Sequence record: MN453779.2 | Direction: 5' to 3' (one strand) | Length of the DNA stretch: 64,000 nucleotides | In this document: positions 3,058 to 50,688 of the stretch, piece after piece | How positions within the stretch are numbered: the first letter of the stretch is position 1 | Layout of the letters: each line of letters begins with the position of its first letter | Translations under genes and position numbers: made by a program | Notes under the pieces: generated by a model | Database searches by the model: none | Told to the model about the DNA's origin: nothing | The model's input: the letters and a program-made list of their open reading frames with translations, nothing else

Positions 3058-3554
3058 TTATGACTGATCAATTCAGTCAGTTTTCTCCAAAGGACAGTTA
3101 CTCCCAATCAGGGAGTAACTTTTCTGGAACTAACTGGCGCGCAGAACAACTTCCTACTGAAGCAGTAAAGAATAGTGATGAATTGGAATATAAACACCAC
3201 CCTAAAGAGTGCCAATACCCATTGATTAATAAACACTTTACTGTTCAGATCAATACTAAAGTAGAATTGGAGTTTCTAAGTAACGTTGAACAGAATACTC
3301 CTTTTGATTATAAGAAATTTGGATTATCTATTCCAAGACAACTCATGACATTATTGAATCAATATAATATCGGAGATGGTTGGAGTTGTAATCCACAACG
3401 TGGTAACAGTGTTGCTGCTTTCTCCCTACTCTATTTTGGAGTAGGTTCCTTAACCCCAACACAATACCAGTTGAATCGTAAAACTCCTCTAGTGGCAATT
3501 GTGGAAGTCGATACGTTTAACGGTAAAGAGGTGTTAAGTCTTGCTGTGAGATAA
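3054..3554 (+). CDS. hypothetical protein
   Basis: 166 aa, GTGA overlap with upstream stop; ATG at 3060 also possible. Confidence 0.6.
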   Translation: MIMTDQFSQFSPKDSYSQSGSNFSGTNWRAEQLPTEAVKNSDELEYKHHPKECQYPLINKHFTVQINTKVELEFLSNVEQNTPFDYKKFGLSIPRQLMTLLNQYNIGDGWSCNPQRGNSVAAFSLLYFGVGSLTPTQYQLNRKTPLVAIVEVDTFNGKEVLSLAVR

Positions 3555-26315: not shown

Positions 26316-27800
26316 ATGTCTATTAAAACACTAACTGAAATCCTTGGTCTTTCTCTTGAATTGAAAGATTATGAAGACAGAGTACAGAAAAGATACGATT
26401 ACATTCAAGAACAATTGAAGCTTGATCCTGAGTTTGTAGCTTATGACTATTTGGAATACTGGGATGGTCGTGCCGATATTCATTATATCATTGATAAGTA
26501 TGTTATTGACACTAAAGGTAATTATTACTTAAATAATAACGGCATTTGTTCTCCACTAAAGGATAAAGAGAATAAGTGGGGAAAGTGGGTAGCTATAAAC
26601 CAGAAATGCGAATATTTTCAAACCCGCCGCATTGTTGCTAGTATGTATGTGCCTAAATCAGATAGTATCTTATTTATTCCATATTGGAAATTGGACGTAA
26701 AATATAAGGATGGGGATAGTAAAAATAAAAACTTTGACAACCTTGACTGGAGTGAAATAAAAGAAGGAAAAGATTATTTAGCTAGTTTACCTAAAACTTT
26801 AACTGAAATCCTTGGGTTAAAGTATGATGAAACAATGAGTTACGAAGAACGTGTTCAAAAGCGTTACAATTACGTTAAAGAGCAATTGGAACTAGATCCT
26901 AACTATGAAGGTTGGGATGTGGTGGAATTTATTAGCGGTGGAATTTATCTAAAACACTTAGTGTGTTTTAATTACCTAATTTCTACCTCTGGTAGGGTTT
27001 TAACGACCGATAAAGACGAAAGAGGATATAAAATACTAACTGGAACGGTTGGTACGGATGAGTATAAGTTCCAAAATTTTCGCGTGAATAAAGATAGACA
27101 TCGTTGTACTATACACCGTGCAGTATCTTCCACGTTTATTTACAAACCACCGCACTACCAACAAAAATTAAATCGCCTGGTTGTTAACCACAAAGATTTA
27201 GACAAATTAAATAATCATTTTACTAATCTTGAATGGTGTACTACTAAAGAGAATGTCCGACATAGAGTTTTGGGATATCAGGCGACGAATATCTATTTCA
27301 ATACAATCTTCGAAGGGACAGTAGAAATAGATTGTAAATATAAAGGTGTTAAGTTTAAAGTTTTTGGCGGTGAAGGTTTGGAGAGTATAGGGTTAGGACC
27401 TAATACTTTAAGTGGGGTATTTACAAAAGGATATGAACTTTCATTTGGGTGTAGCTGGAAGATAATAAACCAAGAAGAAGCTGATAGACTTCCGGATATT
27501 CCTGAGTTTATTAAGGGCAAACTTCTTAATGATAGAAGTTTTATGGACTACCGCATTAAACCTACGAAGGGAACTGTTGTTAAGGACTGTGAATTTAAGG
27601 ACCTGGAGTTTGTTATATTCGGTAGGAGAGAGTTTGTTGGATCTGGTTTTGACCAAGGGTCTGTAGGTAAGGCAATGAAAACTGATACTTTACACCAGGG
27701 GTGTAAGTGGGAGTTTATTACTAGAGATGAGGCTGAACTGTTACCAAGAGGACTAACTAAAGAACAAATGAAAACTATTATTACTAAAAGATGGCCTTAA
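26316..27800 (+). CDS. HNH homing endonuclease with duplicated N-terminal module
   Basis: VNHKDLDKLNNHFTNLEWCT HNH motif; KTLTEILGL...RVQKRY module occurs twice; two C-terminal repeats. Confidence 0.85.
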   Translation: MSIKTLTEILGLSLELKDYEDRVQKRYDYIQEQLKLDPEFVAYDYLEYWDGRADIHYIIDKYVIDTKGNYYLNNNGICSPLKDKENKWGKWVAINQKCEYFQTRRIVASMYVPKSDSILFIPYWKLDVKYKDGDSKNKNFDNLDWSEIKEGKDYLASLPKTLTEILGLKYDETMSYEERVQKRYNYVKEQLELDPNYEGWDVVEFISGGIYLKHLVCFNYLISTSGRVLTTDKDERGYKILTGTVGTDEYKFQNFRVNKDRHRCTIHRAVSSTFIYKPPHYQQKLNRLVVNHKDLDKLNNHFTNLEWCTTKENVRHRVLGYQATNIYFNTIFEGTVEIDCKYKGVKFKVFGGEGLESIGLGPNTLSGVFTKGYELSFGCSWKIINQEEADRLPDIPEFIKGKLLNDRSFMDYRIKPTKGTVVKDCEFKDLEFVIFGRREFVGSGFDQGSVGKAMKTDTLHQGCKWEFITRDEAELLPRGLTKEQMKTIITKRWP

Positions 27801-27853
27801 ACCAATTTGGTCATACCCAAGGTGTAATAGTTTCATTGTCATTGAGGAAAGGT

Positions 27854-28396
27854 ATGGAAAACATGCAATGGGTTTGTTACACAGATGGGAGTTGTCTTGA
27901 CCAAAACAGTGGAACAGGAGGAAGTGGCGCGTGGGCATTTCATGCTATTTTTGGAGAATCGATAGTAGAGAAGTCTTGTGGGTATTTTAAGACTACTAAT
28001 AATAGGATGGAGATATTAGCCATTATCTCTTTTCTAGAGGAGTTTCAAGAGCCCACTAAGGTTACTATACGAAGCGATTCTCAATACACCATTGATGCCG
28101 TTACTAAATGGATCTATGGTTGGATTAAGAATGACTGGGTAACTTCTCAGGGACAACCTGTAAAGAACAAAGACTTATTTGAACGATTGTTTAAATTGGT
28201 AAAGTTTCATACAGTGAAGTTTGAAAAAGTAAAAGCTCACTCTGGCATTATTGGTAATGAACGTGCTGATGAATTAGCCAAGGAAGCAGCAGGAAATCCA
28301 ACATTAGTTGATGAAGGTTATATACCTCCAGATCCTAATGAGGTTAAACCTGTGGTTGTAAAAAAACCTTGGTGGGTAAAATATAAAAAGAAATAA
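27854..28396 (+). CDS. rnhA: ribonuclease HI
   Basis: YTDGS, TTNNRMEILA, IRSDSQY, VKNKDL, KVKAHSGIIGNERADELA. Confidence 0.93.
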   Translation: MENMQWVCYTDGSCLDQNSGTGGSGAWAFHAIFGESIVEKSCGYFKTTNNRMEILAIISFLEEFQEPTKVTIRSDSQYTIDAVTKWIYGWIKNDWVTSQGQPVKNKDLFERLFKLVKFHTVKFEKVKAHSGIIGNERADELAKEAAGNPTLVDEGYIPPDPNEVKPVVVKKPWWVKYKKK

Positions 28397-28397
28397 A

Positions 28398-28427
28398 GTT
28401 CACCCAACTCTATTGAGTTGGGTGAAC
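28398..28427. terminator. 13-bp stem hairpin
   Basis: gttcacccaactc-tatt-gagttgggtgaac. Confidence 0.75.
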
Positions 28428-28435
28428 AATTCAGA

Positions 28436-28458
28436 ATAATTTATTTATTTTATATTAC
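28436..28458 (+). promoter_or_regulatory. putative early promoter facing tailspike A 3' end
   Basis: ATAATTT-atttattt-TATATTAC. Confidence 0.6.
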
Positions 28459-28603
28459 ATTGACCAAGTAAATGACATTGGTAGAACACGATCGTATATT
28501 CTATTACAACTTCAATAAATACAAACCCGGCGAAGCGGGGTAGTGTTTCACTCAAAAACTGGACCCGGGAGTGTTATTGCCCCGTCAATTACACCCGCAT
28601 TGA

Positions 28604-28705
28604 ATTGTACCTGAGCCGTACCGGCCATTGACAGTATTTTGGGTGACGTATTGGGTAGGTTCAACCAGAGCAAGCGCTAATAAGGATTCGTTGATACGAC
28701 GGTGA
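28604..28705 (+). pseudogene. relic C-terminus of small membrane (holin-like) gene
   Basis: ...VFWVTYWVGSTRASANKDSLIRR*; 18/20 aa identical to right-arm copy. Confidence 0.55.
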
Positions 28706-28711
28706 AAAGAA

Positions 28712-28734
28712 AAAGCCCCTGTGAAAGGGGCTTT
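28712..28734. terminator. bidirectional Rho-independent terminator of tailspike A
   Basis: aaagcccct-gtgaa-aggggcttt with A/U tracts. Confidence 0.85.
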
Positions 28735-28767
28735 ATTTTGCGGAGCATCTTCTGGTTGTGCCACTAG

Positions 28768-30732
28768 TCAAACATGTCGCACCACGCCCGTACAGCTATA
28801 TGTCTGCACCGAGCTGTAGAAACTGTCAAACGTCAGGCGAATAAACCCGCCATTATTGGACACAGCAACGGTTTTATCAAACCCATCATGTGACTTGGCT
28901 TTGTCGCCATAAATGTTACCAAACAGTTCATAAGCGCTTAACTCATCTGCTATCGTTATGCGGTACGCTAACAGAGCTGCGTGCTTATTGAATGCTATCT
29001 TTGTGTCTATGATTATAGAGAAAGTGGTGCCGGCTGTTTTTGAGTGCTCACAGAACGCCACCGTCCCTGCTTTAGGCCCCCCTGCCTTACCCTCGTAATT
29101 GAACGGCACTAGAGTGTTACCATGCACCTGAGTCTTAATCATCCCAAACCCAGTGGCCGAATCGAAAAGAATGTTTTCATGCCGAACTCTGGATTTCCCG
29201 CCAAGCGCGTAACCAGCCGGGATTGATGGGTAGCCGTTATTGGCGATGGGGACAGGGGCTATCTCGACCTCACCTAAATCGTTGTAGTTATCCAGCCCTG
29301 AGATTACATTTGGACAAGCAAGGAATCGGTTATTTTCATAAACATGAATTCGGGAGCCATTCGTTCCTCTGTTTATAGCTGTTCCGCATTTGTTGAAGAA
29401 GCAGTTATCAAAGGTCACATCATATTTGAAACCGCCAGCGGACAGGTCCACACCGATCCCAGAATCCCCCTCTAGGTAACACGTATCGAGCTTGATAGGG
29501 CCAGTCTCGCCGGAAATGATAATCCCGTTTGTGCACCCCTCAGCCGAGCAGCAATACAGAGTCTGGCCGTTAGCCCCGCTCGATATTTCAATCCCAGTGA
29601 CACGCCCACTTACAAACACCGATTCAATCGCGCAGACGTTGACAAAATCACGGAAGTAAAAAGCCGGCAACGTGGTTCCCCCTCCACTACCGCGAGAGAA
29701 CAGGTTAACGAAACGCCCGTAGAAACAGCGAGCAGCATAAACAGGTTGAGTACAGTTGGTGAAGTAGATGTTACTAAGCTCACTGTTGAACAGAAAGTTG
29801 TATAGATTAAATACCTTACCACAATCTCTAATACTGGCATTTTTTACAGCAGCCTGCCGAACCAGAATTGTTTCTGGTGGGGCACCGATGTTGCTTATGA
29901 CAGCGCCGCCGGATAAATACCCGCTCTGGAAAACGTCTACAGAACTCCCCAGACCCGGGCCAATAATTTCAGAGTTGCAGAAGTCTAGCTCTACGCAAGA
30001 TGGTACGATCACCGTTTCCGTCAACTTGTAAGATCTATATGGTGCGATTATGCGCCCACCGCCAGCAAGCGCGACATACAGTATCGCGGAGACGAATGCG
30101 GGTGAGTCATTAGTTGTGCCATCCCCCGCTGCGCCAAAGTCGAGGACGTTAAATATAAGCCTGGAGCGCAGTAGCTCACCGCTGCGATCAACAAACCCAC
30201 CGCTCGCTGGGTCAGTACCAGCGGCAACTACACCAGCAGGCCCGGAGAATACCTTACCAGTGCGCTCTTGCAGCAACACATCATTACTATTTACAAGAAC
30301 ACCACCTTGTTCAAAACTCCCTTCAACAAGATCATATCCTGCTTCTTGATAAGTTCTACGAAGTGCTTCTCTTGCTATTACACGTTCATCCCTAGTAACA
30401 ATACCCCATCCTTTCTTACCACCTGGGGTAGGAGAACTATTAGCTGGAACTACATAAGGTAATTTACCATTCCAACTGTACCAATATCCATCTGTTGGAT
30501 AAAAAACACATTTATCACGATCACCGATGCCTAAAGTGCCACCATTAACAAAGTCAAATCCTGCTGGTTTGAACCCAACATCTTTCAAAGCCTGTTGTAC
30601 AGTTTTGTGTTGTTTACCGAAACGATCCTGCCACAATGCAGCTGGGGAATTCATCGCATAATCAAACGAAATAGCGTTATCTTGTAAGTCTTCAGTTGCT
30701 GAAGACCCAATAGGGTTTTGTGTGAAAAACAT
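28768..30732 (-). CDS. tailspike A, polysaccharide depolymerase-type receptor-binding protein
   Basis: N-terminal anchor plus TSP/gp66-like docking modules; NVLDFGAAGDGTTNDSPAF pectate-lyase-3-like start; beta-helix; GC-rich C-terminal region. Confidence 0.85.
   Translation of the reverse strand: MFFTQNPIGSSATEDLQDNAISFDYAMNSPAALWQDRFGKQHKTVQQALKDVGFKPAGFDFVNGGTLGIGDRDKCVFYPTDGYWYSWNGKLPYVVPANSSPTPGGKKGWGIVTRDERVIAREALRRTYQEAGYDLVEGSFEQGGVLVNSNDVLLQERTGKVFSGPAGVVAAGTDPASGGFVDRSGELLRSRLIFNVLDFGAAGDGTTNDSPAFVSAILYVALAGGGRIIAPYRSYKLTETVIVPSCVELDFCNSEIIGPGLGSSVDVFQSGYLSGGAVISNIGAPPETILVRQAAVKNASIRDCGKVFNLYNFLFNSELSNIYFTNCTQPVYAARCFYGRFVNLFSRGSGGGTTLPAFYFRDFVNVCAIESVFVSGRVTGIEISSGANGQTLYCCSAEGCTNGIIISGETGPIKLDTCYLEGDSGIGVDLSAGGFKYDVTFDNCFFNKCGTAINRGTNGSRIHVYENNRFLACPNVISGLDNYNDLGEVEIAPVPIANNGYPSIPAGYALGGKSRVRHENILFDSATGFGMIKTQVHGNTLVPFNYEGKAGGPKAGTVAFCEHSKTAGTTFSIIIDTKIAFNKHAALLAYRITIADELSAYELFGNIYGDKAKSHDGFDKTVAVSNNGGFIRLTFDSFYSSVQTYSCTGVVRHV
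30187..30375 (-). repeat. shared tailspike junction module, copy A
   Basis: REALRRTY...DVLLQERTG...GFVD; exact blocks gaagcacttcgtagaac and tgctgcaagagcgcac in all three spikes. Confidence 0.9.
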
Positions 30733-30812: not shown

Positions 30813-30821
30813 GATTTTATG
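30813..30821 (+). promoter_or_regulatory. putative late promoter, back-to-back with previous
   Basis: GATTTTATG. Confidence 0.6.
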
Positions 30822-30848
30822 TTCATATACTTTAAGAAAGGTCTAATT

Positions 30849-31838
30849 ATGGAACTTGCTAATTTTAAAAAATCCAAGCTTCGGGAGTTTTATCTAACTG
30901 CCAAAGCGGATCTTCAGTTGGTTGAAACTAATATTCTTGGAAATAAAGAAAAATACGAGGGGTGTGAATCTTCCAGCGAAGAACATGCTCTTTTAATTCA
31001 AGTCGCTTCTTATGCCAAGGAAACCTATAATGCTAACGTCACACCAGATATCGATGGAATGGAAGGGTTTGCCGAGGCACTAAAAACTGGACTCAAGCGA
31101 GTAGCTGAATTATTCAAGTCAAAACCAAATAAAGAGCAATTGGCTGTTCTTAAGAAAAATGCCAGTGAGATCACAGCTGCAATAGATCTTTATAAAAGTT
31201 CCAAATGGTTGGACGCACAAACCTTTATCAATGTTGGTCATGTCAAGTTCAATACACCTAAGTTGTTTGGTGAAGTTAAAACAATCGATGATGTTAAAAA
31301 GATCATTGAAGAGATCACCAAAAAGTACGACGCTGTTTTTAAACCCACCTTGGACGACGCATGGAAACGCTTAAGCAAGGGTAGTTCAATTTTTAGCAAA
31401 TATGAAGATAAAGAACCTTCTGAAAAACTGATTAAAGAAGTGGCGGGGTTGGTTCCTATTGCACCGATCTTTAAACCATTCCCTAAAGATTTCATTACGA
31501 GCGCTCTGGGCGGAAATAAAGTCACTATCTCTATCTCGGCACTCACTAAAAGCGACGTTCAAAACGTTGTGGACTTGATGGTGGAGTTAAAGAAGTTCTT
31601 TTGGGAAAAAGAAGAAGCCATGGAAGTGTTACTTTTCGACCTGATGAGCTATGAAGAATATTGGGATAGCGATTTTTGGTCAGAAGTCCCAGAAGAAATT
31701 ATGACGAAGATGGAGAGCGCTACTGAATGGCGTAGCGTTAATGAAACCATCCTCGGACCTCTTTCTAAAGAGTTAGGTGGGATTGTCATGACCATCGGAA
31801 GATTTCTGGAAGATTGGATTCTTTACTCCATTAAATAG
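30849..31838 (+). CDS. putative internal head / virion protein
   Basis: DIDGMEGFAEALK region resembles cleaved head-protein families of phiKZ-like phages (recall); late motif upstream. Confidence 0.45.
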   Translation: MELANFKKSKLREFYLTAKADLQLVETNILGNKEKYEGCESSSEEHALLIQVASYAKETYNANVTPDIDGMEGFAEALKTGLKRVAELFKSKPNKEQLAVLKKNASEITAAIDLYKSSKWLDAQTFINVGHVKFNTPKLFGEVKTIDDVKKIIEEITKKYDAVFKPTLDDAWKRLSKGSSIFSKYEDKEPSEKLIKEVAGLVPIAPIFKPFPKDFITSALGGNKVTISISALTKSDVQNVVDLMVELKKFFWEKEEAMEVLLFDLMSYEEYWDSDFWSEVPEEIMTKMESATEWRSVNETILGPLSKELGGIVMTIGRFLEDWILYSIK

Positions 31839-40028: not shown

Positions 40029-40085
40029 ACCGTTCTGAGGAATCGCTATTAAAGTGGTTTGAATTTTCATAAGAGGAACAGATTA

Positions 40086-42395
40086 ATGTCTAGCAATAAA
40101 CCTTTCCCGTCGTCAGATCTTGACGTATTTAAAGAAAACAGTCTTATATTAGACAATTTTGTCAACAGTCAGGAAAACGAACATCCTGATCGTTTTGCAA
40201 GAAAAAGGCCAACTATTACAGGGATTATCAAAGAAGCTTTTAATGTCCGCACTGATATTTCCAATATGAATGAAACTCTTATTGGTCAAAGTCGTTGGGA
40301 TGCTGTTCCCAAGAACACTAGCTTAGCCCTAGGTGGGGATAATGGTGCTTTGAACAAACAAGCACAAGCTTTATTTAACCGAACCGAATTGTTGAAAACC
40401 CATGCAAGAGAAGCACTTCGTAGAACTTATTTAGAAGCTGGTTTAAATCTTGTTGAAGGTAGTTTTGAGGCTGGCGGTACTCTCGTAAAGGCTAATGACG
40501 TGTTGCTGCAAGAGCGCACCGGCAGGGTGTTCTCTGGTCCTGTCGGTGTAGTTGCCGCGGGGACTGACCCAGCGAGCGGTGAGTTTGTTGATAGAAGTTC
40601 AGTACTTCTAAGAGATATGTCGCAGAAAATATTCAGTACTACCGCGGCCGTGATATCAGCGGCAGCAACATTGAAAATCGGCGATTTAGTCAGCACAGCA
40701 GGTCACACTACGGTCGGGGTCGGGGCGGCAGATTACGTGGTCTCTACAGACATCGCCCGCCCTTTCTTGGACATTAGCTTGGGGGATGGACGGATAGCCA
40801 AAATGCTTATCAAGGAATACATAGACCCAGCTTCTTGTGGTGTTGATACAACTGGTGTTCAGCCGGCCTCGCTGGCGCTTGCTGAAATTTCAAAGCATGG
40901 TTCTATCTCGTGGATTGGTTCGCTTTATATAGACCAAGAGTTCATTTTCGCAGCAGGCAATGACCTGATAGGGCAAGGCCAGCATAAATCGAAGTTGTTA
41001 TTCAAGAATTCCGGTGTTGGCAAGGGTATCGTCAAGTCTACCAGGAGCCGATTCTATAACTTTGGTGTTACGTTAAAGGATTTTTTGGCTCCATTCGATG
41101 GGCAGATGATCACGGTATCAGTGCAGTATGATTACTATATCTACGGCACAGTCCCACGTGAATCAACTGGATATGACCGGCTGGTGTTGGATCACAGTAG
41201 TGATATTTATGCTGTCTCAACAGGTGGAACCAGCCCAAGCGGGGCATCAACAGGCCGCTTCTTGGTGCTGGATACAGGTGATATTAATGGCATCCCAATC
41301 CCCCCGCTAGCAACTCAGCTTGGTATTTACAAATCCCGGTTTGATAACTGCACTGCTATTGGTTTCTATTGTCCATTGACTTTGTTGAGCCGTACTGATC
41401 GCGCTAATCAAGGTGCTCCTTGGATGCACTCCAACCGATTCGCTGGTTGGGTTACAAAAAACAACGTGGTCGAGTTTGAGGCATTGATTCAGACGGTTAC
41501 ACCGAGAGCCGGGTCATTCACTGATAACAAGATAGAAGATTGGGTAACTCAGCCATACAAGAACTCTCAGCGCATCGCCACCATGGAAGGGGCTGGGTTC
41601 AAATTCGTGGACTGTTTCTTCTGGGATCAACACCTCTACCCAGACCAGAGCAAACTGATTGTACTGAGGAAATCAGCCACAGGGGACACAAATTGGATTG
41701 AAAGAAATTCTTTCTACAATGACCACAGACCATCACTGGAATTTGTGCGCTGTCCAATCACCAGAAATAAGATTTCTGTCGAGAATATGACGACAAATCT
41801 ATGGCCTGCTGTCATCAAAATCACCGATAAATTTGGCAATGGAGATTGTGTCGGTGATATACCCATACTTAGTAACATTACAACAGGGACCAATATATCG
41901 AGGTTCATGGCTGTTAACTTCACTACACCGCAGACGGTCGGTGCTGTAGCGCAGTGTACATTCAAAATTAAATCAAAATGGCCGTTAGCTACCGACCCAT
42001 TCCGGGGGGCCATCTACGCCATTGACATTGCTATCAACGTCAAGTTGACTGCTACGGGGTTTGAAGTGAAAACGCACTTGCTAACACCTTACACAGGAAT
42101 CAAAACAGGTATTGATATCTATGCAGATAACCCCCGCCTCGTTAACGGCGAGTACATGTTAGATATTGTTGCATCTCAGAACAGTGTGGCAGCGCCTTTC
42201 CCGTCAATACGACTCAATGACAGCCCTTTACAGAACGGGGACTGGCAGTTATCTAATTCATACGGTATCATTTTGCCTATTCCGTCTGGCCATGGGGCAA
42301 CGACACTATCTGACGCTGCGGTGAAGATAGTGGACACGTTAGATCTGATTGCAGCGAATACAGTCATATCAAAGACAACCGCAATCAGCATATAG
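40086..42395 (+). CDS. tailspike B, depolymerase-type receptor-binding protein
   Basis: ATG 40086 after GAGGA; distinct N-terminus (LGGDNGALNKQAQALFNRT), shared junction module, GC-rich beta-helix region. Confidence 0.8.
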   Translation: MSSNKPFPSSDLDVFKENSLILDNFVNSQENEHPDRFARKRPTITGIIKEAFNVRTDISNMNETLIGQSRWDAVPKNTSLALGGDNGALNKQAQALFNRTELLKTHAREALRRTYLEAGLNLVEGSFEAGGTLVKANDVLLQERTGRVFSGPVGVVAAGTDPASGEFVDRSSVLLRDMSQKIFSTTAAVISAAATLKIGDLVSTAGHTTVGVGAADYVVSTDIARPFLDISLGDGRIAKMLIKEYIDPASCGVDTTGVQPASLALAEISKHGSISWIGSLYIDQEFIFAAGNDLIGQGQHKSKLLFKNSGVGKGIVKSTRSRFYNFGVTLKDFLAPFDGQMITVSVQYDYYIYGTVPRESTGYDRLVLDHSSDIYAVSTGGTSPSGASTGRFLVLDTGDINGIPIPPLATQLGIYKSRFDNCTAIGFYCPLTLLSRTDRANQGAPWMHSNRFAGWVTKNNVVEFEALIQTVTPRAGSFTDNKIEDWVTQPYKNSQRIATMEGAGFKFVDCFFWDQHLYPDQSKLIVLRKSATGDTNWIERNSFYNDHRPSLEFVRCPITRNKISVENMTTNLWPAVIKITDKFGNGDCVGDIPILSNITTGTNISRFMAVNFTTPQTVGAVAQCTFKIKSKWPLATDPFRGAIYAIDIAINVKLTATGFEVKTHLLTPYTGIKTGIDIYADNPRLVNGEYMLDIVASQNSVAAPFPSIRLNDSPLQNGDWQLSNSYGIILPIPSGHGATTLSDAAVKIVDTLDLIAANTVISKTTAISI
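40404..40591 (+). repeat. shared tailspike junction module, copy B
   Basis: 40404-40430 is the exact reverse complement of 30349-30375. Confidence 0.9.
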
Positions 42396-42411
42396 GCTGA
42401 CTTATGAAATC

Positions 42412-42433
42412 AAAGCCCCTTCACAGGGGCTTT
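42412..42433. terminator. bidirectional terminator of tailspike B
   Basis: aaagcccct-tcac-aggggcttt, one base different from tailspike A terminator read in gene direction. Confidence 0.85.
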
Positions 42434-42701
42434 TCCATTTTGCAGTATTCCATTACTAAGTCCTGTACATCGATTTACCCTCAACCAGACTTCCTGTCTC
42501 ACCTGATCAAATGCGTCCTCAGTCTGTATCTGGGACACGAACACGGGGCGCGAATCCCCAACATGTGGATGTTGTATTGGATCTAATCAATTGATGTACA
42601 TTTCATAAATGTACACGTTGTAGTTTGCTCGACATCCATGCAATAATTACTATAGAAAATGAGCAAACATATTTGTAAACTAGATTAAAACAATTAATTT
42701 A

Positions 42702-42795: not shown

Positions 42796-43188
42796 ATGCA
42801 TAATACTGGGAATGACTTAGAATCGAACGATATTCTTGACTTTGAAGACAATACCGTCAATCTTGACATTCTAATGAATGCCGATCAAGAGTACTGGATA
42901 GACCGTCTTGGTAATAAGCGACCCACCATTGATTACGCTTTGCGTATGGCTGGGTTCACACCTGCTGGGTTTGATTTCACCACAGGTGGTGTTTTAAAGA
43001 ATGGTGATCGAAATAAATGCGTATTTAACCAAGCTGATCAAACTTGGTATAGTTGGTCAGGCGATCTTCCTTATAATGTAATTGCTGGTAGTACGCCTGG
43101 GGAAGGTTGGAAAGTACAAGTCACTCCTTCTGTTATTACCAAACTTCAAGAATTGGAAACTAGAATAACTGTTTTGGAAAATAAATAA
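42796..43188 (+). CDS. anchor-only tailspike paralog (no receptor-binding domain)
   Basis: Homologous to N-termini of spikes A and C (DRLGNKRPTID..AGFDF..GG.L...DRNK..YSW.G.LP), then short coiled coil. Confidence 0.8.
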   Translation: MHNTGNDLESNDILDFEDNTVNLDILMNADQEYWIDRLGNKRPTIDYALRMAGFTPAGFDFTTGGVLKNGDRNKCVFNQADQTWYSWSGDLPYNVIAGSTPGEGWKVQVTPSVITKLQELETRITVLENK

Positions 43189-44803: not shown

Positions 44804-44812
44804 GATTTTATG
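44804..44812 (+). promoter_or_regulatory. putative late promoter for tailspike C
   Basis: GATTTTATG; its ATG was taken as start by the ORF track. Confidence 0.6.
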
Positions 44813-44842
44813 TACCTTAAGATAAACAATAGGAATACTGTT

Positions 44843-46981
44843 ATGACTAGATTTAATACAGGTAATGTCATTCCATCGCTAGCCGAAGAAGATTTTTATG
44901 ATAACTCCATGGCTTTAGATGAAGCCATGAATAGCACTGATCCAACTTGGAGAGATAGATTTGGAGTTGAGAAGCCTACGATCGACGCAGCTTTGAAATC
45001 TGCCGGGTTTATGCCGGCTGGATTTGACTTTGTAACTGGCGGGACTCTTCAACCTGGAGATCGCAATAAAGCTGTTTACAATCCTGCTCCTAACGGCGAT
45101 AATAATTGGTATCGTTGGAATGGTGCATTTCCGAAAGAAATTGCTGCTAATAGTCAACCTAATCCCAAAGATGAAAATAATTGGGTATTGGCACATTTTA
45201 GAATTGGAATAGTCGAAAAGGAAGCACTTCGTAGAACATATTTGGAAGCAGGTTATAATCTTGTTAACGGTAGCTTTGAACAAGGTGGGACGTTAGTAAA
45301 TAGTAATGATGTGCTGCTGCAAGAGCGCACAGGGAAAGTATTCACCGGCCCTGCGGGTATAGTTGCCGCCGGAACGAATCCGGCGAGCGGCGGGTTTGTT
45401 GATGTGTCGCCATTCGTATTGAAGACTGAGCCGCCACTGATAGCAAAAACAGGTTCATTCTCATCTGGTGGGCGTGCGGAATCTATGAAATCTGCGCTTC
45501 TTTCTTCAGACGGTTACTACTACACACCGAGAACTGGTGTTATCACAGCGGCTCCAGGATCATCTCCTAATTCTATGTGGGTCTGTGTGGGTCTGCTTAA
45601 CGGAGCGCCCATAGACGACATGCTAAACTGGCTTGATGGTCGCCCGCATCTAAATGCTTTCATTGCTGCTCGCGACAGCAAGTCAATTCGTGGCGGCGGG
45701 GTGGTCACTTTCCCTGCTGGCGATTACACGTTTGCTGATGAATTCGTGTGCGTAGATTACGTCAAGTTTGTGGGTGAAGATCGTAGCAAGTGTCGCATAT
45801 TTGGTGCAGCGGGTTCAGGAGCGGGAAAGGCTGTAGTGAGAGCTTGCAAGTCGCCTGTCGGTTCTGCTGACATACCGGAATATCTATCTTATTCGGGGTT
45901 TAGTAACTGCACAATTAACGGCAACGCAACTTGGGATGTTGGCCTTTACGTTCGCCACTGTACAAACGAATCTGTTTTCGATAACGTTACAGCGCAGAAC
46001 TGTAAAAAGGCTAACTCAATTTTTATCGGCGTCTTTTATGTTAGTGCCAAAAATCACGTAAGCCGAGACGCACGTGACTTGGGTGCTGTCATCGGTAAGA
46101 AGATTTTCAGCGAAGGCGGGCTTCGTGAGGTTAATGCTTCAGCTTTCAATAACCTCAGAGGCAATTACGCAGGACTTGACGACGCCTATGATCCGACCAC
46201 AAACCCATATGCAGGTGCCTGCATAACAATATGGACCGCTAACAGTTGCGCATTTGATTATGTTGGTGCCGAGAATGCTTACGGTGCTGGTGCTATTATC
46301 CGCAAAGGGATAAACAGCACAATCCCGAACTTGTATGTCGAGTCCAATGGGAAGGGCACTGCTGCTGTGGATAAGATCGGAGCCAGGATCATTGCTGCAG
46401 ATTTCCCTTCACTGATCATTGGTTCCCTCTTTGCAACAAGACAGCAGAAGATTTATCTGGAGGGGAGCTCACTGCTGCAAGTTGGCGAAATCTACTCTGA
46501 GTCTTTTGCAAATGGAATTTTCATGGGCACAGGCAAAGTGCTGTTGATGAATGGCCACAGCGCCAATAATTACATTGGGGCAGATCAAGCATTCATTAAT
46601 AACATTGAAACTAAACGCATTGCTCAGTTTGGGAATGTCCCTTTCACCAACTTCGCGAGCCTAGACTCCACAGCTGTTATTTTTGGCGAGGCAATGACAA
46701 ATGTCCAAGTGGTGATGGTGCCTAGAGTAACTTTAACCACGGCAGACCCGATAGTCATTGGGCTGTCAAATTCTCTATCCGGGGGGCAAGTGCTAGAATT
46801 TGGGACATCGTTTACTGCGGGAGTGCCTATTACCAAAACGTTCAGCAAAGTTTCTAAAGGTGCTGGAAGACTTACTCACCGGTCAAATTACCTGCCATCT
46901 ACAACAACAAACTTTGCAATGGACGTGTTCATTATTCAGTACGTTTGTGATTACCAGGCTATTTATAACAAGTGGTTTTAA
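44843..46981 (+). CDS. tailspike C, depolymerase-type receptor-binding protein
   Basis: ATG 44843 after AGGA; anchor like A; GGGVVTFPAGDY beta-helix start; GC-rich C-terminal region. Confidence 0.85.
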   Translation: MTRFNTGNVIPSLAEEDFYDNSMALDEAMNSTDPTWRDRFGVEKPTIDAALKSAGFMPAGFDFVTGGTLQPGDRNKAVYNPAPNGDNNWYRWNGAFPKEIAANSQPNPKDENNWVLAHFRIGIVEKEALRRTYLEAGYNLVNGSFEQGGTLVNSNDVLLQERTGKVFTGPAGIVAAGTNPASGGFVDVSPFVLKTEPPLIAKTGSFSSGGRAESMKSALLSSDGYYYTPRTGVITAAPGSSPNSMWVCVGLLNGAPIDDMLNWLDGRPHLNAFIAARDSKSIRGGGVVTFPAGDYTFADEFVCVDYVKFVGEDRSKCRIFGAAGSGAGKAVVRACKSPVGSADIPEYLSYSGFSNCTINGNATWDVGLYVRHCTNESVFDNVTAQNCKKANSIFIGVFYVSAKNHVSRDARDLGAVIGKKIFSEGGLREVNASAFNNLRGNYAGLDDAYDPTTNPYAGACITIWTANSCAFDYVGAENAYGAGAIIRKGINSTIPNLYVESNGKGTAAVDKIGARIIAADFPSLIIGSLFATRQQKIYLEGSSLLQVGEIYSESFANGIFMGTGKVLLMNGHSANNYIGADQAFINNIETKRIAQFGNVPFTNFASLDSTAVIFGEAMTNVQVVMVPRVTLTTADPIVIGLSNSLSGGQVLEFGTSFTAGVPITKTFSKVSKGAGRLTHRSNYLPSTTTNFAMDVFIIQYVCDYQAIYNKWF
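45221..45403 (+). repeat. shared tailspike junction module, copy C
   Basis: gtaaatagtaatgatgtgYtgctgcaagagcgcac shared with A (1 mismatch). Confidence 0.9.
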
Positions 46982-46984
46982 GCC

Positions 46985-47008
46985 AAAGCCCCTCAATCGA
47001 GGGGCTTT
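46985..47008. terminator. bidirectional terminator of tailspike C
   Basis: aaagcccctc-aatc-gaggggcttt. Confidence 0.85.
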
Positions 47009-47012
47009 CCTT

Positions 47013-47186
47013 TCACCGTCGTATCAATGAGTCTTTATTTGCACTCGTCCTGGTTGAACCAACCCGGTAGGTCACGCAAGACGTTAATATTCTTGATACT
47101 GGCCCAGCCATGTAAACCACGATATCCTTGTTCTCACCAGGAATAGCCCAGATAAACAGAGCGCCGATAATGGCTCCGGTTTTTGA
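47013..47186 (-). pseudogene. relic C-terminal part of small membrane (holin-like) gene
   Basis: SKTGAIIGALFIWAIPGENKDIVVYMAGPVSRILTSCVTYRVGSTRTSANKDSLIRR*; no proper start. Confidence 0.6.
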
Positions 47187-47281
47187 GTAAATACATTGCC
47201 CCCGCTTCGGCGGGTTTGTATTTATTGAAGTTGTAATAGAATGTACGATCGTGTTCTACTTGTCTCGCTTATTCTGTCAAT

Positions 47282-47304
47282 GTAATATACAATAAATATA
47301 TTAT
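47282..47304 (-). promoter_or_regulatory. putative early promoter facing tailspike C 3' end
   Basis: ATAATAT-atttattg-TATATTAC on minus strand. Confidence 0.6.
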
Positions 47305-47312
47305 TCTGAATT

Positions 47313-47342
47313 GTTCACCCAACTCAATAGAGTTGGGTGAAC
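47313..47342. terminator. 13-bp stem hairpin (copy of 28398..28427)
   Basis: gttcacccaactc-aata-gagttgggtgaac. Confidence 0.75.
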
Positions 47343-47347
47343 TTTAT

Positions 47348-50300
47348 TTATCTTTTCATTTCGACGTTAACTATTACATCCCAACTTCTTTCATTATCTG
47401 TTAAAATAATTCTTAGTTGTGTTTCCCCTATCTTACCAGAACTACTGACATTTATTCTGTATTTTCCATCTTCCACTAATTTAACTTTACTGTTAATAAC
47501 TGTTATGAAAGTAGGATCAAAATCAACTTTACCGATTTCTATTGCGTTAAGAGGAACATCAGGTTCATTGTACTTATCTAACTTAACAGTAAAATCTATA
47601 TCAGAATTCACATTAAGAACAGCTATTCCATCAGATACTTCCGAAACCTTAGGAATAACTGGATTAACTTCAATACCAACCTTACCTGAACTCACTGTTA
47701 TACCGCCTAAGTTTACACTAATAATAAACCCACCATTACCGCCCAAATGACTTAACATCAAATGCGATTGATAAATGCCATTTACTGGATCTATTAGTTC
47801 TATAAAACTATCGGTCCCGATAATGGTTGGTAAATTATTATCTCTATTTTGATACCCTACTCCAGCTGTTCTGGCGTTATAAATATAAGAACCAGCTTGG
47901 TCTTTTAGTTTATACAAAATAGCTTGTTTGGTACTAGCTGTAAGGTTATTAGTTAGTAATTCAACAGTTATCCCACTGACAACTCTTCTTGTTACTTGTA
48001 CTAATCCACCTACTTCCTTCCTATATAAGCTAACGTCATCTAACAATCTAACTTCCAAATCTATTTCGGAAATATCGTCTTCCCCCATAGGAACAGATTT
48101 AGTTGTTTCTAAAATTATCCCGTTAGGTTCAATTGACTTAACAAAGACTTCAATGGAAGATAAACTTACATTTACACTAACTCTTGGGTCATTAAGAGAA
48201 ACGCTAGCCCCGTTGTAAATAACAGAAACATTGAGTTTATTACTTAAATAAGACTCAATACTAACCACCCCATCCATAATAACTTTCAATGGATAACTTG
48301 GTGAGATATCGGTTATTACGCTTAGTTCCCCTAATAATCCAGGTTCATTAGGATCTATGCATCTCAGGATGGAAGTAACCAATCCTTGTTCTATTAAACT
48401 ATATCCAATAGTAATAAACTGATCAGTTACTTTCTTTAATCCACTAAAGGTTACATTGGGATGTAAAGTAGAAAGTTCGGGTTTATACAAGACTCGATTA
48501 TTTATCCGCTCACGTTTATTGTAAACGCAAACATCAAACTCTCCGCTTTCTAACTCCCTTCCTTCTATATCTTTAATTCCAGGAATTAAAGCTAAATCAG
48601 GTCCTGTATAACCTAAGATTTCAAACTCTTGTTCCCAAGAAAAGTCTTTCTCAATCCCATCTACCAAAATCTTAAACTTAAAGTTAACAGTCTGAAGACT
48701 AGTCTGAGTACCGCCGTCAACCACAATCCAAGTTTCTTTTATAGTCCAAGGATCAAAGTTAATTATCACTGGAGAAGTTTCACTATTCTCAACATTAACA
48801 GATCTAACTTTATCACTAGATTCATTACCATTAATGTAAACTTGGAATGGCAATGGTCCTTTTTGATATTTAGTCACTGTTTTGTTAAAGCTAGTTCTAG
48901 GTCTTAAATCAACAGTAGAGACTTTAATAACTTCAACATATAGTTTATCACTTCTGGTGTGCAGTTCACCATTACTAGCTGGGTGTTTTAATCCAAGATT
49001 AATACTATCGGTAATAACCATTCCAGGTGAATTAGAATCTTGAACTATTCCGTATCCAAAGCTCTCTGTATCGATCTGTGTTACATTTACAAGTTGTCTT
49101 TGACCAACCAGTCCTGTATTAAGTCCGCATTGATTTAAAGCTAATACAGACCCTTTTAAAGTAACTTGGTAATTGACATTACCAATATCACCTCTCTCCC
49201 CTTTAATTAAAACTGGTTCTAAATTAACCAATTCTAATTGTTCTTGTTCACCCAAGGGTTTAGTAACTTCCAATTCAACAAACAAATTACCTTTATTACC
49301 TTGGTAACTAAACTCTCCAATAATCAAATCTTTAAAACTAGAGTTGTAATCAGGGAGGATGGTTGTTGGAACACCTATATAAAGTAAACCATCTTTCCAA
49401 GTTTTGTCTAAAGTGTATTTGTCGTTAGTTAGTTTACAAGTTAGCCAGTTAGGGTATACGTCAGGGATAACTTCAGTTCCATTAACTTGACATTTAACAA
49501 CAATACCTAATTTGTATAAAGTAGAAGTTCTAATAGTTTCAGTTTGCGCTGAAACAATTAGATTACCAACTTCATCATGATTAACCACAAAACCTACTGT
49601 AACGACTTTAGAGAAGATGTAATCGTCATGGGTTACATTGATGCTGATTTCTACTTCATCGCTTAATACGGAGCCTGCAGAGCCTTTGATGAAGGTAAAA
49701 ATACTTTCTAGTTTATTAGGAGATTGTTTCCCAGAAATAAAACCATTTTTACTTCTGTAAGTTAATTCCGTTTTAGCGGTTACATCAACACCATTAGCAG
49801 TAAAGAGATTAGTAAACCTAACTTCTTCACCTCGTTTACCAGAAAAGGAGCTAGGGAAGTTATCAGTCACTGTATTAAGATCAAGTTGTTCTTGAACTAA
49901 CTCTTCTACAAATAAGTGTACCGGTTCTGTACCTACTGAGTCGTCGGTAATCAATACACCGCCCGATGTTAACTCGCTCTTACTAATATAAGTTTCATCT
50001 TCCCGATAGAACTCAGATTGCTCAAAGAACACATCGCCCATTAGTTCATTGAATTTAGCTAACCCAAAAGCATCTTCGTGTTTAACACAATACCCTAAAG
50101 CATTTCTCCAAACTAAGTTAAGTAGTTTCCCCTGTACTTCTTTCCTATTAAACTTATTCTTAAAATCAGTTAAATTATTACAAACAACAACTTCTCTATT
50201 AAAGTCTTTAGCAATAGTCAACAAGTTAACTGTGGAAACAGGAATATCTACTCTAGCAAATGACTTAGCGCGCTTCACTAAACAGATCTTCTTAGACCCA

Positions 50301-50497
50301 TCGTCGTCAGTATAAACTGATTCAATCATAAAGTCTTCAGGTTCCAAACCAGAGTAACGAGTATCAGCTAAATAACGTTCTACTAAGTTACCTTGTTCGT
50401 TTACAATTTCATGTCTTTGTTTAAAAAACTGTTTCACAATAGAGAATAAAGGATCATTTATCTTCTTTGGGAATAACTTATGTTCATTAGCTACCAT
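47348..50497 (-). CDS. large beta-rich, Ig-like repeat protein (putative virion accessory)
   Basis: ATG 50497 after AAAGGA; beta-strand-rich ~100 aa modules; N-terminal domain homologous to 57720..58319. Confidence 0.6.
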   Translation of the reverse strand: MVANEHKLFPKKINDPLFSIVKQFFKQRHEIVNEQGNLVERYLADTRYSGLEPEDFMIESVYTDDDGSKKICLVKRAKSFARVDIPVSTVNLLTIAKDFNREVVVCNNLTDFKNKFNRKEVQGKLLNLVWRNALGYCVKHEDAFGLAKFNELMGDVFFEQSEFYREDETYISKSELTSGGVLITDDSVGTEPVHLFVEELVQEQLDLNTVTDNFPSSFSGKRGEEVRFTNLFTANGVDVTAKTELTYRSKNGFISGKQSPNKLESIFTFIKGSAGSVLSDEVEISINVTHDDYIFSKVVTVGFVVNHDEVGNLIVSAQTETIRTSTLYKLGIVVKCQVNGTEVIPDVYPNWLTCKLTNDKYTLDKTWKDGLLYIGVPTTILPDYNSSFKDLIIGEFSYQGNKGNLFVELEVTKPLGEQEQLELVNLEPVLIKGERGDIGNVNYQVTLKGSVLALNQCGLNTGLVGQRQLVNVTQIDTESFGYGIVQDSNSPGMVITDSINLGLKHPASNGELHTRSDKLYVEVIKVSTVDLRPRTSFNKTVTKYQKGPLPFQVYINGNESSDKVRSVNVENSETSPVIINFDPWTIKETWIVVDGGTQTSLQTVNFKFKILVDGIEKDFSWEQEFEILGYTGPDLALIPGIKDIEGRELESGEFDVCVYNKRERINNRVLYKPELSTLHPNVTFSGLKKVTDQFITIGYSLIEQGLVTSILRCIDPNEPGLLGELSVITDISPSYPLKVIMDGVVSIESYLSNKLNVSVIYNGASVSLNDPRVSVNVSLSSIEVFVKSIEPNGIILETTKSVPMGEDDISEIDLEVRLLDDVSLYRKEVGGLVQVTRRVVSGITVELLTNNLTASTKQAILYKLKDQAGSYIYNARTAGVGYQNRDNNLPTIIGTDSFIELIDPVNGIYQSHLMLSHLGGNGGFIISVNLGGITVSSGKVGIEVNPVIPKVSEVSDGIAVLNVNSDIDFTVKLDKYNEPDVPLNAIEIGKVDFDPTFITVINSKVKLVEDGKYRINVSSSGKIGETQLRIILTDNERSWDVIVNVEMKR

Positions 50498-50688
50498 AAC
50501 GTAGTTTCCTTTGGTTTTAAGGATAGTCAAAACATCTTTATTTTATTTTTCAATCAAGTCTACTATATTATAACTGACTAGGAAATCCCGGTTAGCCCGG
50601 TAGGGCAGTTTGTTTGTTATATAGCGGAATGAACGTAGTGAATGACTTCCTTATTTATTTAATCTTTAATGTTTATTTTCCTACTTCC

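What the first reader, a model, noticed from the sequence alone, without database searches (positions are those of the whole stretch)
28391..28734. 19-kb segment bracketed by inverted repeats that begin at unrelated stop codons
28391-28440 equals the reverse complement of 47300-47349 (50 bp exact). Further blocks are shared (tatattacattgac; gtagaacacgatcgta; a 32-bp attctattacaac...aaacccg; cgaagcgggg). On both sides the repeat starts at the stop codon of an unrelated gene (RNase H, Ig-like protein). So spike plus trailer plus hairpin moved as a unit, and the arms could flip the whole 28.4-47.3 kb block.
Basis: partly seen in the sequence, partly recalled or inferred. Interest (0 to 1): 0.7.

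Follow-up and report, generated by a model that had tools for sequence, protein, structure and literature searches.

The report
Tailspike-swap scars forming an inverted repeat
The inverted repeat is real, but it consists of the leftover 3' flanks of two oppositely oriented tailspike genes in Aeromonas jumbo phage PS2: stacked terminators plus dead fragments of an old tail-fibre gene and of a donor phage's lysis-region gene, which record repeated tailspike swapping rather than a genome-flipping switch.

Summary
The window is Aeromonas phage PS2 (Ferozepurvirus, 240 kb). The 50-nt exact inverted repeat and the further shared blocks are confirmed. The arms are the whole intergenic trailers 28397-28767 and 46982-47347.

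Each arm sits between a tailspike gene and an unrelated convergent gene, and each is layered:
- an outer module found only in this genus, with a 13-bp-stem hairpin and a small hairpin;
- on the spike strand, a relic of a tail-fibre C-terminus like that of phage phiA009;
- on the other strand, a 3' fragment (20 or 54 codons) of a 167-aa membrane protein that in small Aeromonas phages lies after the endolysin and converges on the tailspike;
- a bidirectional terminator.

Differences between the two fragments fall 10/12 on third codon positions, so they diverged as working genes in different donors.

All five Ferozepurvirus genomes show the same block orientation. The arm pair exists only in PS2 and partly in PS1. 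No invertase is encoded. A 24-74-nt patch in the left arm carries right-arm bases, so the arms have probably recombined without flipping the block.

Verdict: these are recombination scars of a known kind of tailspike cassette exchange. Low-level inversion cannot be excluded without reads.

The parts
28397..28767 (.). Left arm: the whole intergenic trailer between the RNase H stop and the stop of tailspike 1
46982..47347 (.). Right arm: the whole intergenic trailer between the stop of tailspike 4 and the stop of the 1060-aa Ig-like/adhesin-like gene
28391..28440 (.). 50-nt exact inverted-repeat core, left copy. It contains the right-arm-type patch (diagnostic bases at 28411, 28414 and 28434).
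47300..47349 (.). 50-nt exact inverted-repeat core, right copy
28398..28427 (.). Outer hairpin, 13-bp stem, -23.2 kcal/mol. Terminator-like on the spike strand; shared 3' end of the convergent pair RNase H / spike 1.
47313..47342 (.). Outer hairpin, right copy, -23.2 kcal/mol
28526..28540 (-). Small GC hairpin followed by a T-rich run, directly after the relic tail-fibre stop: the old gene's terminator
47201..47214 (+). Small GC hairpin with a UUCG loop plus T-rich run, right copy
28548..28658 (-). Relic of a tail-fibre C-terminus (about 36 codons plus stop). 55% identical to the last 42 residues of the phiA009 tail fibre. The inner boundary is uncertain by about 15 nt.
47173..47190 (+). The last five codons plus stop of the same tail-fibre C-terminus; all that remains in the right arm
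28643..28705 (+). Relic of the phrog_1544 membrane (holin-like) gene: the last 20 codons plus stop, 20/20 residues identical to intact homologues, no start codon of its own gene
47013..47177 (-). Relic of the same gene family: the last 54 codons plus stop (residues 114-167), 90.7% identical to the intact protein of L012
28712..28734 (.). Bidirectional terminator hairpin between the relic stop and the spike 1 stop (-13.7 kcal/mol). Same type as in L009, L012, L013, phiA005 and phiA009.
46985..47008 (.). Bidirectional terminator hairpin after spike 4 (-17.7 kcal/mol). Same type as in L014, L011 and phiA047.
28768..30732 (-). Tailspike 1 (654 aa): Tail_spike_N anchor plus pectate-lyase-like beta-helix. 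The receptor-binding part differs in every relative.
44810..46981 (+). Tailspike 4 (723 aa). Residues 211-723 are 66.5% identical to a tail-collar fibre of a 45-kb phage of the same host strain.
30181..30285 (-). Linker of about 100 nt at the anchor/receptor-binding boundary of spike 1. 80-82% nt identity to spikes of unrelated phages (L012, KLEA5). Candidate 5' homology arm.
45308..45405 (+). The same linker in spike 4
27791..28396 (+). RNase H gene, left outer neighbour (Pfam RNase_H, E=1.5e-40)
47348..50530 (-). 1060-aa conserved jumbo-phage protein, right outer neighbour. No Pfam hit; called adhesin in one relative.

Best explanation
The two arms are the paralogous 3' flanks of two tailspike genes that face each other's outer neighbours. 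Spike 1 lies on the minus strand and converges on RNase H. Spike 4 lies on the plus strand and converges on the Ig-like gene. Each flank is a stack of relics left by successive replacement of the receptor-binding part of the spike.

Layers, read from outside to inside:
1. A module found only in this genus: the big hairpin, an AT-rich spacer and a small hairpin. This was the 3' untranslated end of an ancestral tail-fibre gene.
2. The last codons of that ancestral gene.
3. The 3' end of a 167-aa membrane protein gene. In small Aeromonas phages this gene follows the endolysin and converges on the tailspike.
4. The bidirectional terminator that this gene shares with the spike.

The donor-gene fragment and terminator came in as passengers when a spike was taken from such a phage. 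What the arms do today is terminate transcription of the convergent gene pairs. That role is inferred from three terminator-like hairpins in series on the spike strand.

The arms may also serve as homology for further exchange. The spike receptor-binding part is flanked on its 5' side by a ~100-nt linker shared with unrelated Aeromonas phages, and on its 3' side by the terminator plus relic. The arms look like an inverted repeat only because the two spike genes point in opposite directions. This arrangement is ancestral to the genus and is present even where no trailer exists.

Shown: the anatomy, the homologies, the codon-position pattern, the distribution among relatives and the constant block orientation. 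Inferred: the order of events, terminator activity and the role as homology arms.
For: - Identity of the window and gene map.
- Holin-like relics: tblastn matches residues 114-167 at 47016-47177 (90.7%, E=3e-27) and residues 148-167 at 28643-28702 (100%).
- Intact 167-172-aa genes lie after lysis genes and converge on a tailspike in L009, L010, L012, L014 and in phage KLEA5. The family is phrog_1544.
- Left-versus-right differences in the shared 20 codons: 10 of 12 at third positions (binomial P=5e-4), 9 synonymous and 2 non-synonymous codons. Divergence is 20% here against about 10% in the outer module.
- The truncation point differs between contexts: residue 114/115 in PS2-right, PS1-right, ACP1-right and pAEv1810-left; 148 in PS2-left; about 143 in phiA005 (L013 keeps a similar short fragment, judged by eye); 136 in phiA047.
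- Each arm's terminator matches a different donor type.
- Tail-fibre relic: 55% identity over 42 residues up to the shared stop of the phiA009 tail fibre, plus its downstream hairpin.
- The same trailer is linked to different receptor-binding parts in close relatives.
- The linker is 80-82% nt-identical to spikes of unrelated phages.
- Hairpin energies and T-runs.
- Same block orientation in all five genomes, including AVP1, which has no arms.
Against: - No donor was found in which the present receptor-binding part of spike 1 or spike 4 sits next to the holin-like gene. The best relative of spike 4 is in a P2-like tail gene cluster. The passenger fragments may therefore belong to earlier spikes than the present ones.
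- The membrane protein has no Pfam hit and is called holin in only one record at 35% identity, so 'holin' is a label of convenience.
- The perfect amino-acid conservation of the 20-codon left fragment, and a 35-codon ORF with a GTG start in the right arm, would also fit a functional mini-gene.
- Terminator activity is predicted, not measured.
- Only five genomes of the genus exist in the collection.
Confidence: 0.75

Rival explanations
1. Genome isomerism: general homologous recombination between the roughly 350-nt arms flips the 18.9-kb block, so phage stocks hold two isomers. This has been reported for a ~30-kb IR-flanked block in Anabaena cyanophages.
For: The arms are long enough and have a 50-nt exact core. 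A 24-74-nt patch in the PS2 left arm carries right-arm bases, including a flipped hairpin loop, so the arms have probably paired at least once. The crossover would lie in intergenic DNA and would break no gene. There is a precedent with IRs of 400-700 nt and no obligatory recombinase (preprint 10.64898/2026.02.14.705889).
Against: All five genomes of the genus have one orientation, whereas orientations differ among the cyanophage relatives. The arm pair is present only in PS2 and, as the 161-nt outer module, in PS1. pAEv1810 has the left arm only, ACP1 the right arm only, and AVP1 none. The arms are only 82-90% identical outside the core. Hairpin template switching plus one substitution could produce the patch without inter-arm pairing.
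Confidence: 0.12
2. Programmed site-specific inversion of a tail-fibre region, as in the Mu G segment or P1 C segment, which switches host range.
For: Tail-fibre/tailspike genes lie at both ends of an IR-bounded block.
Against: Pfam scans of every ORF of at least 100 aa in the block and beside it found no serine or tyrosine recombinase. The repeats lie downstream of the spike stop codons, so inversion would change no spike protein. One orientation is seen in all relatives.
Confidence: 0.02
3. The conserved parts of the arms are functional genes in their own right. One version is a small membrane peptide: 25 codons from TTG in the left arm, or 35 codons from GTG in the right arm, ending in the same 20 residues. 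The other version is an inward-reading small RNA that starts at a promoter-like site in the outer module and ends at the inner terminator.
For: The ORFs are open in PS2-right and ACP1-right with a GTG start preceded by an AAGGA motif. The 20 C-terminal residues are identical across many contexts. Weak sigma-70-like sites point inward. A stop codon is followed directly by a hairpin and a T-run.
Against: The pAEv1810 copy carries one frameshift. The N-terminal extents differ in every context. The PS2-right copy has five residue differences from the intact L012 protein over 54 codons, against one in ACP1; at least two of them are private to PS2-right. Promoter-like sites are no more frequent than in shuffled sequence. 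No Rfam family matches anywhere in the window. The conservation is explained by recent capture from genes under selection.
Confidence: 0.08

Closest known systems
Modular tailspike exchange with a conserved N-terminal anchor (Ackermannviridae TSP1-4; Sorensen et al. 2021, PMC8432352)
   Same: Several paralogous spikes per genome share a conserved N-terminal anchor, with a Pfam Tail_spike_N (TSP1/Gp66) hit. The C-terminal receptor-binding parts are unrelated. A short conserved motif sits at the junction. Close relatives carry different receptor-binding parts on the same anchor.
   Different: Here the 3' side also has a recognisable shared flank: a terminator plus a dead fragment of a donor's neighbouring gene. 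The same flank recurs in unrelated Aeromonas phages, namely siphophage-sized genomes, Plateaulakevirus and jumbo Ferozepurvirus. Older gene ends are stacked behind it.
Mosaic joints and conserved boundary sequences of lambdoid and other tailed phages (modular evolution; recalled from general knowledge, not checked in a paper here)
   Same: Short stretches shared at gene boundaries mark where modules from different phages were joined. Gene fragments without function remain as scars.
   Different: The scars here occur twice in one genome in opposite orientation, and so mimic a designed inverted repeat around a 19-kb block.
IR-flanked invertible ~30-kb block of Anabaena cyanophages (bioRxiv 10.64898/2026.02.14.705889)
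   Same: Inverted repeats of some hundreds of nt bracket a block of tens of kb in a lytic tailed phage, and no dedicated recombinase is needed in principle.
   Different: In the cyanophages the IRs are present at analogous places in all relatives, orientation differs between relatives, and both isomers were shown in stocks. Here the pair is not conserved and the orientation is constant. Population data are lacking.
Mu G segment / P1 C segment / shufflons (site-specific tail-fibre inversion)
   Same: Tail-fibre genes are associated with inverted repeats.
   Different: There is no invertase. The repeats lie outside the reading frames, the arms are long and imperfect rather than 26-34-bp crossover sites, and inversion has no coding consequence.

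Membership tests
Site-specific invertible tail-fibre segment (Mu G/Gin, P1 C/Cin type) | Invertase (serine or tyrosine recombinase) gene in or next to the segment | tested here: not met
   Pfam scans of the ORFs of the block and its neighbours gave RNase_H, HNH_3, HTH_37 and Tail_spike_N/pectate-lyase hits only, and no recombinase.
Site-specific invertible tail-fibre segment (Mu G/Gin, P1 C/Cin type) | Crossover sites placed so that inversion swaps alternative tail-fibre C-termini | tested here: not met
   The arms lie wholly downstream of the spike stop codons. Inversion would leave all ORFs unchanged.
IR-mediated genome isomerism (cyanophage A-1(L) group) | Inverted repeats of hundreds of nt around a large syntenic block | tested here: met
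   Arms of 366-371 nt, 82% identical overall with a 50-nt exact core, enclose 18.2 kb between them.
IR-mediated genome isomerism (cyanophage A-1(L) group) | The IR pair is conserved at analogous positions in relatives | tested here: not met
   Pair in PS2. PS1 has only the 161-nt outer module on the left. pAEv1810 has the left arm only, ACP1 the right arm only, AVP1 none.
IR-mediated genome isomerism (cyanophage A-1(L) group) | Both orientations among relatives | tested here: not met
   Same gene order and strands in PS2, PS1, pAEv1810, AVP1 and ACP1.
IR-mediated genome isomerism (cyanophage A-1(L) group) | Both isomers coexist in one stock | not testable with these tools
   No reads are available; only finished assemblies.
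Modular tailspikes with exchangeable receptor-binding part | Conserved N-terminal anchor and unrelated C-terminal part among paralogues and among close relatives | tested here: met
   Spikes 1, 2, 3 and 4 share only the first ~100-230 residues (29-58% identity). The left spikes of the five phages share only nt 1-327 to 1-546. Tail_spike_N hits.
Modular tailspikes with exchangeable receptor-binding part | Conserved junction motif shared across spikes that could support recombination | tested here: met
   A ~100-nt linker is 79-82% nt-identical to spikes in L012, L016 (KLEA5), L009 and L003, and 74-76% to L013.
phrog_1544 membrane protein (holin-like, lysis-region gene) | Full-length protein of about 167 aa with an N-terminal glycine-rich part, a coiled middle and C-terminal hydrophobic helices | tested here: not met
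   Only residues 114-167 (right arm) and 148-167 (left arm) are present, and there is no start of the original gene. These are relics, not members.
phrog_1544 membrane protein (holin-like, lysis-region gene) | Holin function of the family | not tested
   PHROG category 'unknown function'; no Pfam hit. One record says 'holin'; neighbours are annotated lysozyme or lytic transglycosylase.
Intrinsic (rho-independent) terminators | GC-rich stem-loop followed by a T-run | tested here: met
   Three per arm on the spike strand. The stems fold at -23.2, -8.1/-11.6 and -13.7/-17.7 kcal/mol. The small middle hairpin is not significant against shuffles.
Intrinsic (rho-independent) terminators | Transcripts end there | not testable with these tools
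   Needs transcript 3'-end data.

The most novel reading that the evidence does not exclude
Two elements may form a portable pair of homology arms that makes receptor-binding modules swappable cassettes across otherwise unrelated Aeromonas phages, from 44-kb siphophages to 120-kb Plateaulakevirus and 240-kb jumbo phages. One element is the terminator plus holin-tail relic; the other is the ~100-nt spike linker. On this reading the relic is kept because it gives access to this shared pool. As a side effect, the two copies in PS2 may allow occasional flipping of the 19-kb block.
Probability: 0.2. Interest if true: 0.5.

Novelty: new member of a known kind. Interest (0 to 1): 0.3.

Why it matters
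The finding turns a striking-looking repeat into a readable record of how a jumbo phage has changed its host-recognition proteins. The layers give the relative order of at least two replacements per locus. They point to the kind of donor: small Aeromonas phages in which a lysis-region gene converges on the tailspike. They also show that the same junctions are reused in several phage groups. For annotation, about 370 nt at each site should be labelled as gene relics and terminators, not as an invertible element or an RNA gene. The result is also a caution for automated searches for invertons in viral genomes: paralogous 3' flanks of oppositely oriented genes give long inverted repeats without any switch.

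Tried and rejected
- **Known RNA family.** My first impression was a small RNA gene with a promoter and terminator. Rfam at gathering thresholds found nothing in the whole window, and promoter-like sites are at the level of shuffled sequence. The periodic substitution pattern showed coding ancestry instead.
- **Strand of the conserved 66-nt segment.** Third positions coincide in the sense frame and one antisense frame, so periodicity alone could not decide. It was settled when intact 167-172-aa genes were found in six IMG/VR contigs. The 198-aa antisense ORF in phiA005 overlaps real genes and was discarded.
- **pAEv1810 gp169.** This 140-aa ORF inside that phage's left trailer was tested as an intact version of the PS2 relics. 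It has no similarity to them and no family hit. It is probably a further relic layer; this was not resolved.
- **Outer hairpin in IMG/VR.** A search for it returned 0 contigs, so no extra relatives could be recruited for the orientation test.
- **Phage CF8.** It is a different genus with a different gene order and was not usable for the orientation test.
- **Donors of the present receptor-binding parts.** Searches found only a P2-like tail cluster for spike 4 and distant hits for spike 1. The link between the present spikes and the relics therefore remains indirect.
- **Pfam holin families.** The intact protein gave no hit.

Full report
**1. Identity and observation**

The window is Aeromonas phage PS2 (MN453779.2, genus Ferozepurvirus, 240,447 bp; window position x = record position x + 124,000). 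It matches at 100% identity over 24.6 kb.

- 28391-28440 is exactly the reverse complement of 47300-47349, and the exact run stops at both ends.
- The repeat extends as 28379-28540 / 47200-47361 (162 nt, 90%) and 28639-28712 / 47006-47079 (74 nt, 81%).
- The full trailers align at 82% identity with a divergent middle.
- The record holds only these two copies.

**2. Context**

The left arm (28397-28767) lies between RNase H (27791-28396, +; Pfam RNase_H, E=1.5e-40) and tailspike 1 (28768-30732, -). The right arm (46982-47347) lies between tailspike 4 (44810-46981, +) and a 1060-aa protein (47348-50530, -) that is conserved in related jumbo phages.

Both arms are therefore the shared 3' space of a convergent gene pair in which the inner gene is a tailspike. 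The block between them holds small genes of unknown function, an HTH protein, tailspike 2 (40059-42395), a spike reduced to its anchor (42796-43188) and an HNH endonuclease (43700-44746).

**3. Anatomy of the arms**

On the spike strand each arm has three terminator-like hairpins in series:
- one directly after the spike stop (-13.7 and -17.7 kcal/mol);
- a small one in the middle (-8.1 and -11.6 kcal/mol);
- a 13-bp-stem hairpin at the outer end (-23.2 kcal/mol).

Between them lie fragments of two genes.

(a) Tail-fibre relic. On the spike strand of the left arm, 28548-28658 translates to about 36 residues that align with the last 42 residues of the tail fibre of Aeromonas phage phiA009. Identity is 55%, E=3e-7 in the small database, and the alignment ends at the same stop. 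The DNA match continues into the hairpin downstream. The right arm keeps only the last five codons and the stop.

(b) Holin-like relic. On the opposite strand, 28643-28705 (left) and 47013-47177 (right) are the last 20 and the last 54 codons of a 167-172-aa protein. This protein is intact in six IMG/VR contigs and in cultured Aeromonas phages.
- The right fragment is 90.7% identical to residues 114-167 of the intact protein.
- The left fragment is identical to residues 148-167.
- The intact gene belongs to phrog_1544 (E=1.2e-31; function unknown) and has no Pfam hit.
- It lies after a lytic transglycosylase or lysozyme gene and converges on the tailspike gene with a shared terminator, for example in phage KLEA5 gp42-gp45 and in L012, L009 and L014.
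- One record calls a 35%-identical homologue a holin. I use 'holin-like' only as a label.

**4. The inner layers were captured separately**

- In the 20 codons present in both arms, 10 of 12 differences fall on third codon positions (binomial P=5e-4). Nine codons differ synonymously and two non-synonymously, and both non-synonymous changes are private to the right arm.
- Divergence there is 20%, twice that of the non-coding outer module. The two fragments therefore diverged while they were parts of working genes, that is, in different donors, and not after a duplication inside PS2.
- In keeping with this, each arm's inner terminator matches a different donor type. The left one matches L009, L012, L013, phiA005 and phiA009. 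The right one matches L014, L011 and phiA047.
- The gene is cut at different residues in different contexts: 114/115 in PS2-right, PS1-right, ACP1-right and pAEv1810-left; 148 in PS2-left; about 143 in phiA005 (L013 keeps a similar short fragment, judged by eye from the sequences); 136 in phiA047.
- The copy in pAEv1810 also carries one frameshift.

**5. Distribution in the genus**

| Phage | Left arm | Right arm |
|---|---|---|
| PS2 | present | present |
| PS1 | 161-nt outer module only (90.7%) | identical to PS2 |
| pAEv1810 | outer module, an extra 140-aa ORF, then a right-arm-type holin relic | none |
| ACP1 | none | present (91%) |
| AVP1 | none (56 nt between RNase H and spike 1) | none |

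In all five genomes the order and strands are the same: RNase H (+), spike 1 (-), the plus-strand genes, spikes 2-4 (+), Ig-like gene (-). The inverted position of spike 1 is therefore ancestral and does not depend on the arms.

The outer hairpin was not found in IMG/VR. The phage collection holds only these five genomes of the genus.

**6. Evidence for cassette exchange**

- The left spikes of the five phages share only their first 327-546 nt. After that each has a different receptor-binding part.
- ACP1 and PS2 have the same right trailer, with the same truncation point, but different spike 4 receptor-binding parts.
- The paralogous PS2 spikes share only the N-terminal ~100-230 residues, with Pfam Tail_spike_N hits.
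- A ~100-nt linker lies at the end of the shared part: spike 1 at 30181-30285, spike 2 at 40497-40592, spike 4 at 45308-45405. It is 79-82% nt-identical to spikes of the unrelated phages L012, KLEA5, L009 and phiA009, and 74-76% to L013.
- The variable part is thus flanked by shared sequence on both sides.
- This matches what is described for Ackermannviridae tailspikes, where a conserved motif at the end of the anchor is proposed as a recombination site (PMC8432352).

**7. Do the arms interact?**

I compared left-arm-type sequences (PS1, pAEv1810) with right-arm-type sequences (PS2/PS1, ACP1). The PS2 left arm has right-type bases at three consecutive diagnostic sites: 28411 and 28414, which together flip the hairpin loop, and 28434. 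It has left-type bases at 28388 and 28390 and from 28465 onwards.

This patch of 24-74 nt explains the 50-nt exact core. It fits a short gene conversion between the inverted arms. It also fits template switching within the hairpin plus one coincident substitution. It is the only sign that the arms pair.

**8. The inversion hypotheses**

- A programmed switch of the Mu G or P1 C kind is excluded. There is no recombinase, the repeats lie outside all reading frames, and inversion would have no coding consequence.
- Isomerism through general recombination has a recent precedent in cyanophages. There, however, the IR pair is conserved and orientations differ among relatives. Here neither is true.
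- Rare inversion in PS2 stocks cannot be excluded without reads.

**9. Verdict**

The repeat is real and non-random, and its cause is historical. The two arms are 3' flanks of oppositely oriented paralogous tailspike genes. Each is built from an old tail-fibre gene end, a passenger fragment of a donor's lysis-region gene, and terminators. It is a new and rather clear example of a known kind of phage mosaicism. Interest is modest.

- While thinking, I loosely recalled from memory what members of a Pfam holin family look like.
- The tblastn table printed shows match bounds on either side of the single frameshift in the pAEv1810 relic.

Noticed in passing
window 42796-43188 (+): A tailspike gene is reduced to its N-terminal anchor (130 aa, Tail_spike_N hit). 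The homologous position holds full-length spikes of about 750-950 aa in pAEv1810, AVP1 and ACP1, and the same short form in PS1. This is one truncation. Whether the anchor alone is still built into the virion is unknown.
   Followed up: partly
window 26316-27800 (+) and 43700-44746 (+): Two paralogous HNH endonuclease genes form direct repeats at 70-78% nt identity, 16,937 nt apart. The second sits directly upstream of spike 4 and is absent from that position in PS1. AVP1 has one upstream of spike 2. These are mobile endonucleases next to spike genes and could promote local recombination.
   Followed up: partly
window 18729, 31912, 34907, 39368, 50687, 58393 (37 nt each): A six-copy direct-repeat family of AT-rich 37-mers (70-86% identity), several of them just upstream of gene starts (for example 31985, 34934, 39489). 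It may be a phage promoter motif.
   Followed up: no
window 30182-30380 versus 40404-40597 and 45210-45403: The spike linker regions are themselves inverted repeats (194 nt, 81-83%) between spike 1 and spikes 2 and 4. A crossover there would exchange anchors and receptor-binding parts between spikes in frame. No sign of this was seen in the five genomes.
   Followed up: no
L004 (phiA005) 3083-3205; L006 (pAEv1810) 3475-3552; also L009, L012, L013, L005, L019: A short conserved ORF of 25-40 codons lies between the stop of the holin-like gene and its terminator in several phages. It is missing from both PS2 arms, L011 and L014, and is rearranged in phiA047.
   Followed up: no
L004 (phiA005) 2472-2985 and L013 6127-6757: An overlapping i-spanin/o-spanin-like gene pair (N-terminal membrane helix protein, with an embedded ORF that has a lipobox-like signal) sits directly upstream of the holin-tail fragment. 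In these phages a different lysis cassette seems to have replaced the holin-like gene and left its last ~25 codons. The assignment was made by eye only.
   Followed up: no
L006 (pAEv1810) 2884-3303 (-): A 140-aa ORF (gp169) lies inside the left trailer of pAEv1810, with no family hit and no similarity to the PS2 arms. It is probably a further relic of an older spike C-terminus.
   Followed up: partly
window 30819-31838 (+): This 339-aa gene next to the start of spike 1 is present in PS2 and pAEv1810 but absent from PS1, AVP1 and ACP1: a presence/absence difference at the other end of the spike 1 locus. It has no Pfam hit.
   Followed up: no
window 42407-42440: The terminator after spike 2 is the same hairpin type as the inner terminator of the left arm (82-88% identity), but no holin-like relic was detected behind it.
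   Followed up: partly
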